64,000 nucleotides of DNA from Lepidodermella squamata (taxonomy: Eukaryota > Animalia > Gastrotricha). Both the position numbers and the translations under genes were made by a program. Location of the stretch: the NCBI GenBank assembly GCA_047495785.1, contig JBLDXI010000090.1, positions 64,702-128,701 of the forward strand, given 5' to 3'. Under the pieces are notes generated by a model, which was not told the origin of the DNA, did no database searches, and saw only the letters and a list, made by a program, of their open reading frames with translations. Positions 16,227-22,987 of this stretch are shown here, in pieces; the first letter of the stretch is position 1, and each line of letters starts with the position of its first letter.

Positions 16227-17700
16227 ACCAATCCGAGTTGCTTTACGACGCCTGTCGCCGTTTTTTAGAAAAACAGCAACTAGCGCTTTACGTCATAGCA
16301 TCAAGGTTAGAGGTATATATTTTTACCAATAACTTTGCCGTCTGTTGCATTTCGCACTTCCCGGTCGATATATTTGCCATCCATCCTTGTTATACTGTGG
16401 CTTAGGAAGCCAAAAGAATTGCCACTTCTACAGGGGCCTTCGGCTTAGACAGCCGGCAGCAAATTGCAACTCTACAAAACCAGTCGCTTCGACAGCGGCC
16501 GGGAGAAATTATACTAGTGCGTATAATTAGGATTTCATAGCGCATCGACCAGTATATGCTAGATACACCTGACTGGCGCGTTTCAGTGTGCCACGACCGC
16601 TGTGTTAAGAGCGGACGATAACCAACTAGTCGCAGCCATTTGCAGTGCTGACAAGGAATAAATTCGCTTATCTACAACTGACAAACCCTGTAGTATATAA
16701 CACAGCGCACAACTTTTACGGCCGTCAGCTCTCACGATAGTAGAGCTGAGTGGCGCCGCATTTATTGCATATGCTTTTCCTGCAGCAGCGTTTTATATAA
16801 ATATTACGCGCTGTCGTCTCATAAGAGTACCTGTGTTAGAGTTTGAGGCGATTACACAAAAGGCGATGATTACGAGGCGATGAATACGAGGCGAACACGA
16901 TCCCGCTTATTCCTTGCTATCCTATAAAAAAAACCGCTTGAAAAACCGAATTGTACGCAAAAAATGGCACCTGAGAACAGCGGAACTCGTTTACCATCAA
17001 CTTACTGTGTTACGCAATGGGATTTGTTTACTTCGATTGTGCCAGATGTTACATTGTTGCGCAACCGAGACAATTTAACGAGGTCAATTTTTCGAACAAT
17101 GAAATGTGACATTTTCCGGCTGTAGAATTACTCAGAATCCTTCATCATTCAGCCGCGGCTTTAAGAACAGCGCTTCTCGATCGACTCATAGGAAATTTTT
17201 CCGCGTTCCTATGCCTTAGGACTCCTCGATTTCGGGCCAAAAAAGTGAAAAATTTAAAACAAAACCGGCGGATACCGGCAAAATTTTTGCAAATTTATAG
17301 TAAATATCTGCGATTGAATATTAAATTTTCTGGGGTTACCGTCATTTTCGTTTCGACGTCTGTCTACTAGAACGCGCGTTTTTAATACAAATAAATTTGA
17401 GGTTTTTTCTTGCGAAAATTCGTCGTTCTTCTATTAGAACGCGCGAATCCCCGTATTTTTGTTACCCCTGCCCGGCGGCTTGCGCTATTGCAGCCGTAAT
17501 TACCGCGGTGTCAGGTTTGTGGATTTCCGCATTTTTGTATATTTTTCTTGTTCCTGTAAATTTTTCGGTTTTGTTAATTTTTACTTTTATTTTGCACTTG
17601 GCATTTTTCGGATTTCCTAAAAGTCCGGAAAATCGACTTGCGTTTTGAAAACAAATTCTGCCTACTGGCAAATTTTGCACGTTACGGGCGGTCCGCTCTG

Positions 17701-17890
17701 TGACCTACTTGTTTTTATTAGCTTGACCTAGTTCTATTTTTAGCGCGTCCTCGTTTCGTCCGTTTTATTTGCGGCCGCTCGGTGTCCGTTTTTATTAGTT
17801 TGACCTAGTTCTATTTTTAGCTTGACCTAGTTCTATTTTTAGCTTGACCTAGTTCTATTTTTAGCGCGCCCTCGTTTCGACCGTTTTATT
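17701..17890 (+). repeat. 22-bp repeats in the 5' UTR of the retrotransposon
   Basis: TTGACCTAGTTCTATTTTTAGC at 17723, 17800, 17822, 17844; diverged copy at 17701; ~52-bp direct repeat 17718-17769 / 17839-17890. Confidence 0.9.
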
Positions 17891-20052: not shown

Positions 20053-22987
20053 CTCCCGTTCTGTTCCTTTCCGTGTGATGCAGTGGAACTGTGAGGGCAT
20101 CATGCGGAAACAGTTCGAGTTAGCGTACGCCGTCGAGAAGTATCACCCTGATGTAATTTTAATTAACGAGTCACATTTGCGCGACGACATAGTTTTCGCG
20201 CTTGCTGGTTTTTCCATTTTTAGAGTTGATCGTGTTGGGGCCCACAATGGCCCACGTGGCGGCGTTCTCATTTTAGTATCGCACGCGTTACTGCTCCTTG
20301 ATTGCACGGCTGTCGTGCACGCGCCAGGCATGATAGGCGAATGGCTGGCTTTAGAACTGCTCTTAGGTGACGCTGCGGCGTCGGCGCGGGTTACGATTGC
20401 GACGGGGTACCACCCCTGGGCGAGTGAGCTCGATGCCTCCTTCCTGTCTCGTGTGCTCTGCGATGCCGCGCCCGGGTCCTTTGTGGTTTTTGGGGGCGAT
20501 TTAAATGCGTGGGCGCCTGAGTTGGGGACGAAGGGCTGGAACGCGAGCGGCCATGTCTTCAGCGAGTTTCTCAAAAATCCGGGGGTCGTCCTCCTGAGTT
20601 CGCCGCATGCACCGACGCGGTGGCGGGCCGGCAACACGCCTAGGGTACTTGATGTGTGGCTCTGCTCTCCCGCCGCTTCCTCCTGTGTCCGCATGTCTCC
20701 TGTGGTCGCGGAGCAACTCGGCTCGGATCACGCTCTCTCTGTATGCGACTTCGACGTGGCGCTGCAGGCCCGGAACTACTGGTCGCCCCCAGTGGCGCTG
20801 CCAGCCGTGCGCTGCGACCTTACCCGTTTCGATTTCTCTCGGGCAGACTGGCCGTCTTACGAACGTGAATGCGAACAGCGACTGCTCGACGTTACCGTCC
20901 CGAAGGGCGGCGATCCACTGATCGTGCTCGACCGATTTTCCGACTCCCTGATAGTCCTCATGTTGGCCAGCGCAGCGGTTGCCATCCCCCGTGTTCTGTT
21001 GGGCAAGCTCCCCAAGGTCGTTCTCACTACGGCTGCTAGACGTGCCATCGACCGCCGCACCTCGTGCGAGCTGCGTCACAAGAGGGAAGGATCTGCTGCG
21101 TCGAAGGCTGCTCTCAATGCTTCGACGCGGCAAGTGGCCCGTGAAGTCGCCGCTATTCAGCAACGTCTTAGTTTTCGACGGCTCACCCAGGTGGAAGCGT
21201 TGTTTCGAGAGAACCAGGCAGCCCGGGCTTGGAAAAATCTGCGGTGGCTCTTGGGTGAAAAGAGCGCCGGTCGGCGTGAGTTGCCCGCCCTAAGCCTTGA
21301 CGGTGGCCCTGCGGTAACCTCGGATGCGGACAAGGCACGTTTGTTCGCTGAGCGGTGGTCGCCCACCTTCCACGCTTCGCCCTCCTCCAGCCCCCACGCA
21401 TGCGACGCGACCTTTTGGGAGTCAATTGACACTGCGTGCGCGTCCGACCCCGAGCTGCACGCGCTTGATACACTGCCGCACGAGCTTCCGCTACGCATTT
21501 CGCGACCCGCGCTGAACGCACAGCTCAGTCTCTTGAAATTGTCCGCGCCGGGCGAAGACCAGGTTCTTAACCCGTTGCTGCGTCATGCTCCGCCGGCTCT
21601 GCTAGACGCGCTGCTGACTCTTTACAATTATAGCCTCAATTCAGGTCACCTGCCAGCCGCCTGGAAGACGTCCCTGACGGTCCCCGGTCCGAAGGCGGGT
21701 AAGTCCCCGCGGTCCTTCGACGGCTACCGGCCTATCGCGCTGTTGTCCTGCCTGTCCAAGCTACTTGAGGCCCTGGTTGCCCGCTTCCTTCTCGAGTTCT
21801 GCATCCTTCATGGAAAGTTGCCTCCCGGCCAGGTCGCGTTCCAGCACCACCGTTCCCTCCTCGACGCGGTGATCCGGCTTCTCCATGACGTTGCTGAAGG
21901 TCGCGCCGACCCCGACCGCCTGTGCACCGTTGCTGCGTTCCTGGACCTGCGCTCGGCCTACGACACGGTATGGCTTAACGGCCTCCGCGTGGTGCTCCAG
22001 GGCCTTGGGCTTCCAGTCGCTGTCGTACGCTGGGTGTCGGACTTCCTCCGTGGCCGTTCGTCCCGCGTTCGTGTTGGTGACTCCCTCAGCGCTCCTTTTC
22101 CCTGTGACTGTGGTGTGCCGCAAGGCTCCCCCCTCTCCCCGATTTTGTTCATCCTTTTTACCGCCGGGTCGCTCCCGTCGACTGTCCGCCCAGACGACGC
22201 CAGGAAATCGTCCGCCTCTGCCGCGTATGCTGACGATCACGCCATTTGGGCTTCCGGCGCTCCAGCAGCCAACGCGACGGCACGGCTCCAGGCCTCCCTG
22301 CGAGTGTACGAACGGTGGTGCCAGAGGTGGCGGCTCGACGTGAACCCCCGCAAATGCGAGTTTGTTGCGTTTGGTGCCGACGCTGACGTTTCTGCCGGCC
22401 GACTCGTTGTTGCCAACGCACCGGTCCCTCGCTCGGAGGAGTTCCGGTACCTCGGGTTGTGGCTGACGAAGCATCTCAACTGGCAGCACCAGGTGGATCA
22501 CGTCAAGGGCATCGCCGGCCTCCGCCAGTCTGCGCTTCACCGTGCCCGCGTCAGTAGTCACCCCCGCCTAGGCCTCCTGGTCTACAAGACGCTGATCCGG
22601 CCGGTTGCCGAGTTTGGTTGCCCCGCGTTCGTCAACTTCCAGCCGCGCTTCCTTGCTCAGCTGCTCGCCGTCGAGAAGCGGTCCGTGCGTTCCATCCTCG
22701 GCCTTGCTCGCGGTACGCCCGACGCCGTTTACGACACCCAGGTCGCTGCTGCGTTCCCGTCCTTCACGCCACTCAATGCACGGTTGGGGGAGCTGGCGTT
22801 CCACTTCTTCAACCGTGCACTGGAGTACGGTAGTCCCGTCGGTGAGCTCGTCCGCCTCGCCCGCTGCGCGCCCCTCCCGGCTAGCAAGTCGCCTGTTCGT
22901 TTCTTCCTGTCGAGCCTGCTTGGTGCCGGTCCTCTACCGGCGGTTCGCCCCTCTTTCCCCCGTCCATCGGTGCTGCAGTCTGCGTGA
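20045..22987 (+). CDS. ORF2, AP-like endonuclease plus reverse transcriptase, 980 aa
   Basis: APE motifs QWNCEG, LINESH, GDLNA, LDV, SDH. RT motifs APGED, YRPIALLS, FLDLRSAYDTV, GVPQGSPLSP, YADD, RYLG. No RNase H or C-terminal CCHC seen. Overlaps ORF1 by 8 nt (ATGCCTAG). Confidence 0.96.
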   Translation: MPSSRSVPFRVMQWNCEGIMRKQFELAYAVEKYHPDVILINESHLRDDIVFALAGFSIFRVDRVGAHNGPRGGVLILVSHALLLLDCTAVVHAPGMIGEWLALELLLGDAAASARVTIATGYHPWASELDASFLSRVLCDAAPGSFVVFGGDLNAWAPELGTKGWNASGHVFSEFLKNPGVVLLSSPHAPTRWRAGNTPRVLDVWLCSPAASSCVRMSPVVAEQLGSDHALSVCDFDVALQARNYWSPPVALPAVRCDLTRFDFSRADWPSYERECEQRLLDVTVPKGGDPLIVLDRFSDSLIVLMLASAAVAIPRVLLGKLPKVVLTTAARRAIDRRTSCELRHKREGSAASKAALNASTRQVAREVAAIQQRLSFRRLTQVEALFRENQAARAWKNLRWLLGEKSAGRRELPALSLDGGPAVTSDADKARLFAERWSPTFHASPSSSPHACDATFWESIDTACASDPELHALDTLPHELPLRISRPALNAQLSLLKLSAPGEDQVLNPLLRHAPPALLDALLTLYNYSLNSGHLPAAWKTSLTVPGPKAGKSPRSFDGYRPIALLSCLSKLLEALVARFLLEFCILHGKLPPGQVAFQHHRSLLDAVIRLLHDVAEGRADPDRLCTVAAFLDLRSAYDTVWLNGLRVVLQGLGLPVAVVRWVSDFLRGRSSRVRVGDSLSAPFPCDCGVPQGSPLSPILFILFTAGSLPSTVRPDDARKSSASAAYADDHAIWASGAPAANATARLQASLRVYERWCQRWRLDVNPRKCEFVAFGADADVSAGRLVVANAPVPRSEEFRYLGLWLTKHLNWQHQVDHVKGIAGLRQSALHRARVSSHPRLGLLVYKTLIRPVAEFGCPAFVNFQPRFLAQLLAVEKRSVRSILGLARGTPDAVYDTQVAAAFPSFTPLNARLGELAFHFFNRALEYGSPVGELVRLARCAPLPASKSPVRFFLSSLLGAGPLPAVRPSFPRPSVLQSA

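What the first reader, a model, noticed from the sequence alone, without database searches (positions are those of the whole stretch)
17339..22987. Intact APE-type retrotransposon that replaces 3.15 kb of an rDNA unit, antisense to rRNA
Seen: both ORFs are open with catalytic motifs intact. The 5' side joins the IGS and the 3' side joins 28S at unit position 3288, in an AT-looped expansion hairpin about 980 nt upstream of the R2 site. Unit positions ~139-3287 (IGS, 5S, 3' 28S) are absent. Knowledge: R1 and R2 insert in the sense orientation near the R2 site and can delete upstream target DNA; I know of no rDNA element with this target. Inference: a new rDNA-specific LINE family that primes in 28S and resolves its 5' end in the IGS, turning a unit into an ~10.9-kb element-bearing repeat. 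The alternative is an IGS insertion followed by a deletion.
Basis: partly seen in the sequence, partly recalled or inferred. Interest (0 to 1): 0.88.

Follow-up and report, generated by a model that had tools for sequence, protein, structure and literature searches.

The report
Spliced-leader-gene LINE copy with a later deletion
The element is a real, young jumping gene, but it does not aim at the 28S rRNA gene: its family always inserts at the end of a small spliced-leader RNA gene in the rDNA spacer, and this one copy later lost its tail and 3.15 kb of neighbouring rDNA in a single deletion.

Summary
ORF1 and ORF2 (APE + RT) are open, the 5' side joins the spacer, the 3' side joins 28S antisense, and 3,154 bp of rDNA are missing.

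The copy is not intact, and 28S is not its target.
- The genome holds 12 other copies, 98-100% identical. All run 0.7-0.96 kb further: 12 more ORF2 codons and a structured 3' UTR without poly(A).
- All 12 end at one spacer site, 2 nt before the end of a 33-nt spliced-leader exon (SL-A). Their 5' truncations vary.
- The 28S junction occurs once in the assembly.
- Contig C80 carries an undeleted twin. Its element is 100% identical, the next 28S is 100% identical, and the next spacer holds the same truncated copy of a second LINE. The spacing is 3,992 bp longer.

The event could be insertion-coupled, or an assembly error. Public contigs neither show nor exclude the junction.

The family itself is of interest. 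It is an APE-type LINE that targets a spliced-leader gene, a target I found reported only for restriction-like-endonuclease LINEs. It probably uses that gene's promoter and leader. Earlier notes of this scan describe the same guild on other pieces of this genome.

The parts
17302..17332 (+). First 31 nt of the 33-nt spliced-leader exon SL-A. It lies directly upstream of the element. This is the target gene, and probably the true start of the element's transcript.
   Evidence: The same sequence occupies 8562-8592 of an empty unit. The exon occurs 536 times in the genome. Dispersed copies are followed by unrelated sequences straight after the exon end.
17333..17378 (+). First 46 nt of the element. 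They are a diverged, in-register copy (about 70% alike) of the last 2 nt of the SL exon plus the first 44 nt of the SL intron. The splice-donor hexamer is altered from GTTAGT to GTTACC.
   Evidence: Alignment of six spacers. 5'-truncated copies lack this stretch and join the exon directly, so it belongs to the element and is not a target duplication. A second partial copy of the motif lies at 17419-17445.
17333..17964 (+). 5' UTR, with short tandem repeats at about 17700-17880.
   Evidence: Sequence. No Rfam family was found in a full copy at E up to 1, so no HDV-like ribozyme.
17965..20052 (+). ORF1, 695 aa, gag-like, with three CCHC zinc knuckles.
   Evidence: Translation. No Pfam match above threshold. 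The nearest ESM Atlas clusters are CCHC and PRE_C2HC proteins, mostly of arthropods. ORF1 is 695 aa in five of the other copies and 701 aa in a sixth.
20045..22987 (+). ORF2 (APE endonuclease + reverse transcriptase), 980 aa here. It overlaps the end of ORF1 by 8 nt. It is truncated: the natural protein has 992 aa. The last sense codon is completed by 28S sequence (2 of its 3 bases) and the stop codon is 28S sequence.
   Evidence: Pfam. All 12 other copies end in the same 13 residues that are missing here.
22981..22982 (.). Deletion junction. Element position 5,649 (of about 6,490-6,530) is joined to 28S with 1 nt of microhomology. Lost: about 837 nt of the element (13 codons and the 3' UTR) and 3,154 bp of rDNA.
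   Evidence: Alignment with intact 28S. The junction is unique in the assembly. The twin on C80 is 3,992 bp longer at exactly this point.
22982..24571 (-). Remaining 5' part (about 1.6 kb) of the 28S gene of the next unit. The rRNA gene is truncated and dead.
   Evidence: Rfam LSU matches. BLAST to the reference unit.
28299..29387 (+). Second, unrelated LINE (27% aa identity to ORF2). It is 5'-truncated and frameshifted, with a 3' UTR and poly(A), and it is flanked by a 14-bp target duplication (28285-28298 and 29388-29401). It sits 3 nt downstream of the same SL-A site.
   Evidence: Sequence and translation. At least 40 copies in the genome, mostly on small rDNA contigs. 48-61% aa identity to a LINE at an SL-like gene in metagenome contig L052.
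8562..8594 (+). Empty SL-A exon in a reference unit. The family inserts after 8592, within 2 nt, and the donor GT is at 8595. A second SL-like exon, SL-B, lies at 9032-9063.

Best explanation
The block is one copy of a young, site-specific APE-type non-LTR retrotransposon, about 6.5 kb long.

The family's only target is the 3' end of the exon of a spliced-leader RNA gene (SL-A). That gene sits in the rDNA spacer, on the strand opposite to the rRNA genes.
- Canonical copies insert 2 nt before the exon end.
- They end without poly(A) in a short CT-rich tail that resembles the exon end.
- They carry a 0.7-0.96 kb 3' UTR with tandem hairpin units.

The window copy arose as such a canonical full-length insertion. 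Afterwards one deletion of 3,992 bp, with 1 nt of microhomology, removed its last 13 codons, its 3' UTR, the rest of the spacer, SL-B, the 5S gene and the 3' 2.1 kb of the next 28S gene.

The result can still encode both proteins. It lacks the 3' end that target-primed reverse transcription needs, so it is most likely immobile in cis. It also inactivates one rRNA unit.

Shown: the family's target, the common 3' end, the truncation, the uniqueness of the junction and the undeleted twin.

Inferred: the order of events, the immobility, and that full-length copies are transcribed from the SL gene promoter with the leader as their 5' end.
For: Copies and their ends
- There are 13 copies at 98-100% identity. 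Seven reach the 5' end and six are truncated, at element positions 318, 1611 (two copies), 2879, 3267 and 3776.
- All 12 other copies rejoin the spacer at unit position 7760 after a further 0.7-0.96 kb.
- The 3' ends were read in 11 of them (L007's was not resolved) and all read ...CACATTTCT(CT)nG followed by AGGTTAGT.
- ORF2 ends in the same 13 residues in all 12 and is 992 aa wherever its start is present. It is 980 aa only here.
- The 28S junction 38-mer occurs once in 121 Mb.

The twin on contig C80
- The element is 100% identical over 5,654 bp with no mismatch.
- The 2,037 bp of 28S after the breakpoint are 100% identical. The other units of the window differ from it at 1 to 13 places.
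- The next spacer carries the second LINE with the same private 5' truncation point. Only these two of 40 copies match the first 9 nt.
- The distance between the two elements is 14,953 bp on C80 and 10,961 bp here, a difference of 3,992 bp.

The target is a spliced-leader gene
- The exon 21-mer occurs 536 times.
- The 20 dispersed copies examined share the leader, most of them from (A)AATATCTGC. They run into unrelated sequences straight after CTGAG, several with a nearby ATG and open frame.
- The exon is followed by a GT donor.

The leader travels with the element
- A variant exon end occurs only twice in the genome (L005 has a near-variant).
- Both times it lies directly upstream of a full-length copy, and those copies have different downstream spacer variants.
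Against: - The junction rests on the assembly alone. Logan contigs of the only public run that holds the element follow the intact form through position 22982, and none of the listed contigs bridges the junction. Such contigs drop rare variants, so this neither supports nor refutes it.
- The left flanks of the window copy and the C80 twin differ. C80 has an extra non-coding element of about 0.87 kb in tandem, and the flank is 98.7% identical. The two regions are therefore not simple alleles.
- Recombination in rDNA arrays could in principle have restored an intact 3' end in C80.
- No RNA data exist for this organism in the tools. Transcription from the SL promoter is untested.
Confidence: 0.85

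Rival explanations
1. One-off insertion-coupled rearrangement. Reverse transcription was primed at a chance break in 28S on an internal site of the element's RNA, independent of the endonuclease. The 5' end, which carries leader sequence, was then resolved by homology in the SL-A gene of the neighbouring unit, and the 3.15 kb in between was lost.
For: - The copy is full length at its 5' end and lacks its 3' end, as do endonuclease-independent LINE-1 insertions (established knowledge).
- Two other copies show insertion-linked rearrangements on the 5' side: L013 joins 18S with 2.2 kb of target lost, and L011 joins inverted spacer.
- The 5' junction here is the normal full-length one.
Against: - The C80 twin shares the identical element, the identical downstream 28S and the same private copy of the second LINE.
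- This rival therefore needs two independent insertions of an identical element into the same one of a few hundred SL-A genes, of which only about 13 are occupied by this family.
Confidence: 0.07
2. Assembly artefact. A chimeric read or a wrong join in a repetitive array created the element-28S junction.
For: - Public contigs do not show the junction.
- The same contig also holds a head-to-head inversion of the array at about 53766-53771.
- The sequences on both sides of the junction are identical to those of another contig.
Against: - The region is not a copy of C80 elsewhere. The left flank differs and lacks the tandem short element. The unit to the left carries its own 397-bp 28S insert and a 110-bp deletion.
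- The join has 1 nt of microhomology, as real end-joining events do.
Confidence: 0.06
3. One reading: a LINE family whose endonuclease nicks 28S at this expansion hairpin and whose 5' end is regularly resolved in the spacer.
For: Only the structure of this single copy.
Against: - None of the 12 other copies touches this 28S site, and all 12 end at SL-A.
- The junction is unique.
- It truncates ORF2 and removes the 3' UTR, which is conserved in all other copies and in a 60%-identical relative from another sample.
Confidence: 0.01

Closest known systems
R1 (28S) and other sequence-specific APE-type LINEs of the R1 and Tx1 clades (TRAS, SART, Keno, Mutsu)
   Same: - Two ORFs: a gag-like ORF1 with three CCHC knuckles and an APE + RT ORF2 without RNase H.
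- One fixed target in a multicopy RNA gene, a precise 3' junction and variable 5' truncation.
- The 3' end resembles the target.
- Tandem head-to-tail copies occur.
- Upstream target is sometimes deleted.
   Different: - The target is a spliced-leader RNA gene, not rRNA, snRNA, telomere or microsatellite.
- There is no poly(A) tail.
- The 5' end carries a diverged copy of the target gene's intron.
- Clade membership by RT tree could not be tested. The R1Bm endonuclease did not match at E up to 10 and the TRAS1 endonuclease only at E = 1.
SLACS, CZAR and CRE1/2 (trypanosomatids) and NeSL-1 (nematodes): spliced-leader-gene LINEs
   Same: They insert into the spliced-leader exon of SL RNA genes. 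SLACS RNA starts at the SL gene's own start site (my knowledge). The review passage in PMC4640811 lists spliced leader exons among LINE targets and says that target-specific APE-type lineages belong to the R1 and Tx1 clades, while other target-specific lineages encode a restriction-like endonuclease.
   Different: Those elements have one ORF with a C-terminal restriction-like endonuclease. This one has an N-terminal APE endonuclease and a separate gag-like ORF1. It inserts at the very end of the exon rather than inside it.
R2, and 5'-junction formation by co-transcription with the target
   Same: - It lives in rDNA.
- It probably has no promoter of its own.
- Upstream target sequence appears to travel with full-length copies.
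   Different: - R2 has a restriction-like endonuclease, a single ORF and sense orientation in 28S, and it is released by an HDV-like ribozyme.
- Here there is no ribozyme match, the element is antisense to rRNA, and a small-RNA gene promoter is the presumed driver.

Membership tests
Site-specific APE-type non-LTR retrotransposon | N-terminal APE endonuclease and RT with catalytic residues | tested here: met
   Pfam Exo_endo_phos 4.6e-15 and RVT_1 4e-32. The catalytic residues lie in invariant alignment columns.
Site-specific APE-type non-LTR retrotransposon | One common 3' junction with variable 5' truncation, all copies in one target | tested here: met
   12 of 12 other copies are at SL-A. 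There are five different truncation points.
   The junction 38-mer occurs once in the genome. The other copies run on into a 3' UTR.
R1 clade | Placement inside the clade on an RT tree with reference elements | not testable with these tools
   No Repbase or Dfam reference set is on hand. The best database relatives are unnamed metagenome proteins.
R1 clade | ORF1 with three CCHC knuckles; ORF2 with APE + RT and no RNase H | tested here: met
   Translation. Pfam finds no RNase H. This architecture is shared with Jockey-like clades, so it is not sufficient for membership.
R2 / NeSL / CRE / SLACS (RLE-type LINEs) | Single ORF with a C-terminal restriction-like endonuclease and no APE domain | tested here: not met
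   There are two ORFs and an N-terminal APE. Nothing but RT follows in ORF2.
Spliced-leader RNA gene (the target) | The leader is found at the 5' ends of many unrelated transcripts or their retrocopies, and a GT donor follows it in the gene | tested here: met
   536 genomic matches. All 20 dispersed copies examined diverge straight after the exon end. The gene has AG|GTTAGT.
Spliced-leader RNA gene (the target) | Sm-binding site and direct RNA evidence of trans-splicing | tested here: inconclusive
   SL-B has an AAUUUGA stretch before a hairpin. SL-A has no clear Sm site. No Rfam match. No RNA runs are available.

The most novel reading that the evidence does not exclude
This concerns the family, not the 28S junction.
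- It is an APE-type LINE lineage that inserts 2 nt before the end of the spliced-leader exon.
- It is transcribed from the SL RNA gene's own promoter, so its RNA starts with the leader and looks like an already trans-spliced mRNA.
- Its altered donor keeps the leader from being spliced away.
- It shares the site with at least one other LINE lineage and a short non-coding rider.
- The habit is old: related LINEs sit at SL-like genes of another organism (contig L052).
Probability: 0.5. Interest if true: 0.75.

Novelty: new variant of a known kind. Interest (0 to 1): 0.45.

Why it matters
For the finding as written, it matters little. The 28S junction is a single secondary deletion, not a new target or mechanism.

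The family behind it matters more.
- In the literature I could search, spliced-leader genes are a LINE target only for the old restriction-like-endonuclease clades. Target-specific APE-type lineages are there placed in the R1 and Tx1 clades (PMC4640811).
- An APE-type lineage aimed at the end of the leader would be a second, independent invention of that niche.
- It would also suggest a simple way for a retrotransposon to obtain a host-type capped leader without trans-splicing.

The deleted copy and its undeleted twin also give a dated example of how such insertions erode rDNA units.

Tried and rejected
- A long target duplication as the source of the intron-like 5' end. Rejected: 5'-truncated copies join the exon directly.
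- An HDV-like or other known RNA at the element's ends. No Rfam match at E up to 1 in a full copy and none in the spacer.
- Naming the clade.
  - Two word-index protein searches gave only a few unnamed or generically named hits.
  - The exhaustive search gave unnamed metagenome relatives, the best at 41% identity.
  - The PDB search of the endonuclease domain gave TRAS1 only at E = 1.
- Target of the closest relatives.
  - The contig of the 41% relative has no DNA on file.
  - The contig of the 60% relative ends inside the 3' UTR.
  - Relatives L051 and L053-L055 have poly(A) and unrelated flanks, so not all kin are site-specific.
- Expression. No RNA run holds the element.
- Reads across the junction. 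Only contigs of one run were available, and they follow the intact form. This is no evidence against the junction.
- Literature search for the leader sequence: no relevant paper.
- The organism's identity was not established. Earlier notes call it an animal, and I did not test that.
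Full report
**What is in the window**

The window is a tandem rDNA array. 18S, 5.8S and 28S are on the - strand and 5S on the + strand, and the unit is 8,459 bp long (Rfam; self-BLAST). I number the unit from the 5S start at window 830.

At 17333-22981 a block of 60-69% G+C interrupts the array, which is about 47% G+C.
- ORF1 (17965-20052, 695 aa) has three CCHC knuckles.
- ORF2 (20045-22987, 980 aa) has an N-terminal APE endonuclease and a reverse transcriptase (Pfam).
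- All catalytic residues are present.

On the left the block joins the spacer at unit position 7763. On the right it joins 28S at unit position 2459, the equivalent of window 3288, antisense to the rRNA. 3,154 bp of rDNA are missing between the two joins.

The word "intact" is not, as shown next.

**The family's real target**

A search of the whole genome found 13 copies that are 98-100% identical, all on rDNA contigs. I laid their flanks on the rDNA unit.
- Every one of the other 12 copies runs past the point where the window copy stops. Each continues for a further 0.7-0.96 kb and then rejoins the spacer at unit position 7760.
- The extra part holds 12 more ORF2 codons. ORF2 ends in the same 13 residues in all 12 and is 992 aa wherever its start is present.
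- It also holds a 3' UTR with tandem units of about 61 nt and no poly(A).
- The 3' ends were read in 11 of the 12 (L007's was not resolved). All read ...CACATTTCT(CT)nG followed by the spacer's AGGTTAGT. Only the number of CT units varies.
- The 5' ends are full length in seven copies. The rest are cut at element positions 318, 1611 (two copies), 2879, 3267 and 3776.

This is the classic signature of target-primed reverse transcription at one fixed site. That site is in the spacer, not in 28S. The 28S junction occurs exactly once in 121 Mb.

**What the target is**

- The 21 nt upstream of the insertion point occur 536 times in the genome, many on large contigs far from rDNA.
- In the 20 dispersed places I fetched, the shared sequence most often begins at (A)AATATCTGC, with some 5' truncation.
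- It ends at CTGAG. After that each place continues differently. Several continue with a short leader, an ATG and an open frame.
- That pattern is what retrocopies of mRNAs carrying a trans-spliced leader look like.

In the spacer the 33-nt exon (8562-8594 in an empty unit) is followed by a GT donor (AG|GTTAGT) and a hairpin. I call it SL-A. A second gene of the same build, SL-B, lies at 9032-9063, upstream of 5S.

The element inserts 2 nt before the end of the SL-A exon. There is no RNA evidence, because no RNA run is available. Neither Rfam nor a clear Sm site supports SL-A. The identification therefore rests on the retrocopies.

**Why the window copy ends in 28S**

Contig C80 carries a twin of this region.
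- Its element is identical to the window copy over 5,654 bp without a mismatch. The other copies differ by 0.05 to 2%.
- The 2,037 bp of 28S to the right of the breakpoint are identical as well. The other units of the window differ from that stretch at 1 to 13 places.
- The next spacer on both contigs carries a 5'-truncated copy of a second LINE with the same private truncation point. Of 40 copies scored, only these two match the first 9 nt.
- The distance from the element's start to that second LINE is 14,953 bp on C80 and 10,961 bp here.

The difference of 3,992 bp is exactly the element's missing 837 nt plus the 3,154 bp of missing rDNA. The join shows 1 nt of microhomology.

The simplest history is a normal insertion at SL-A followed by one end-joining deletion.

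I cannot exclude two rivals.
- An insertion-coupled event primed at a chance break in 28S. It would need a second, independent hit by an identical element in the same one of a few hundred SL-A genes.
- An assembly error. Logan contigs of the only public run that holds the element follow the intact form through 22982 and show no bridging contig. Such contigs drop rare variants, so this is not evidence against the junction.

**How the family probably works**

Shown:
- the fixed site;
- a 3' end that resembles the exon end (TTTCTCTG against TTTTCTG), with a variable CT count, as expected if the RNA's 3' end pairs with the nicked target and slips;
- head-to-tail tandems, in which a full copy follows the 3' end of a non-coding element of about 0.87 kb that shares both termini (L002 and L007).

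Also shown:
- The first 46 nt of full-length copies are a diverged, in-register copy of the last 2 exon nt and the first 44 intron nt. The donor hexamer is changed.
- 5'-truncated copies lack this stretch, so it is part of the element and not a target duplication.
- A variant exon end, TTACATTTTCAG, occurs only twice in the genome. Both times it lies directly upstream of a full-length copy, and those copies have different downstream spacer variants.

Inferred from this, and by analogy with R1, R2 and SLACS:
- Full-length RNA starts at the SL gene's own start site and carries the leader.
- The leader's complement on the cDNA guides a precise 5' join in the next SL gene.
- The altered donor keeps the leader on the RNA.

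The window copy keeps the 5' half of this system and has lost the 3' signal. It may still be transcribed and translated, but it should not move in cis. Its read-through would be antisense to 28S. This last point is speculation.

**Relatives elsewhere**

The exhaustive protein search gave only unnamed metagenome proteins, the best at 41% identity.
- Contig L052 holds two LINEs in tandem, each about 30% identical to ORF2. One of them is 48-61% identical to the window's second LINE.
- Each ends directly before the GT donor of an SL-like gene. The exon of that gene resembles SL-A, and its intron hairpin differs by paired changes.
- Other relatives (L051, L053-L055) have poly(A) tails and unrelated flanks. 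The habit therefore belongs to some sublineages only.
- A 60%-identical fragment (L075) keeps the tandem 3' UTR hairpin units, with compensatory stem changes.

**Comparison with known families**

By its way of life this is a sequence-specific APE-type LINE, like R1 or the Tx1 group. By its target it resembles SLACS, CZAR, CRE and NeSL. Those elements use a restriction-like endonuclease and a single ORF, and neither feature is met here. PMC4640811 places the target-specific APE-type lineages in the R1 and Tx1 clades and lists spliced leader exons among LINE targets. My searches found no APE-type element reported at SL genes. An RT tree against reference clades could not be built here.

**Verdict**

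The copy itself is an ordinary deletion derivative. The family is a new variant of a known kind. This scan has already noted it on other pieces of the same genome (notes s1-410256, s1-421450, s1-393949, s1-374103).

Noticed in passing
window 28299-29387 (target duplications at 28285-28298 and 29388-29401): A second LINE family, only 27% aa identical to ORF2. It has a poly(A) tail and a 14-bp target duplication, and it is inserted 3 nt downstream of the same SL-A site. It has at least 40 copies in the genome. It is 48-61% identical to a LINE at an SL-like gene in metagenome contig L052.
   Followed up: partly
window 10097-10492, in the 28S of the unit left of the element: A 397-bp non-coding insert flanked by an 11-bp direct repeat, ATCCCTGTGGT, in the conserved 3' part of 28S. 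It is present at 98-100% identity in at least 12 rDNA units, and partial copies are dispersed on chromosomes.
   Followed up: partly
window 9824-9840: A deletion of about 110 bp in the 3' end region of the same 28S gene (unit positions 553-664). This unit therefore carries three lesions.
   Followed up: no
window 53766-53771: A head-to-head inversion of the rDNA array in the 5' external spacer. The arms end at unit positions 6795 and 6935, so the palindrome is asymmetric by 140 bp. Contig C126 also has an inverted pair of element copies (L010/L011). I cannot say whether this is real or an assembly artefact.
   Followed up: no
L002:607-1494 and L007 (contigs C80 and C27): A non-coding element of about 0.87 kb at the SL-A site. 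Its 5' end is intron-like, and its last 100 nt or so are 74-76% identical to those of the autonomous element. It is directly followed in tandem by a full-length copy. It is probably a non-autonomous rider.
   Followed up: partly
window 9032-9063 (also 8705-8740 and 9232-9265): A second SL-like gene (SL-B) with a GT donor, an AAUUUGA stretch and a hairpin. A motif of about 30 nt, GTCGCCAATGACCAYGTGCATGTGG, is repeated downstream of SL-A and just upstream of 5S. It may be a shared promoter element.
   Followed up: no
L008:7040-7300 and L075:1000-1140: The element's 3' UTR holds 3-6 tandem units of about 61 nt. Each can form a hairpin. The stem differs by paired changes (CACGGG/CCCGTG against CAAGGG/CCCTTG and CAGGGG/CCCCTG) in a 60%-identical relative from another sample.
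   Followed up: partly
L013 (contig C51) and L011 (contig C126): Two other copies have aberrant 5' junctions. One joins 18S at unit position 5590, with 2.2 kb of upstream target lost. The other joins inverted spacer at unit position 7353.
   Followed up: partly
L031-L050 (dispersed chromosomal places): Many retrocopies begin with the spliced leader. Several groups share what follows the leader, for example GGYGGGAGACG... and ATAGGGGA.... They may be retroelement families whose RNA is trans-spliced.
   Followed up: no
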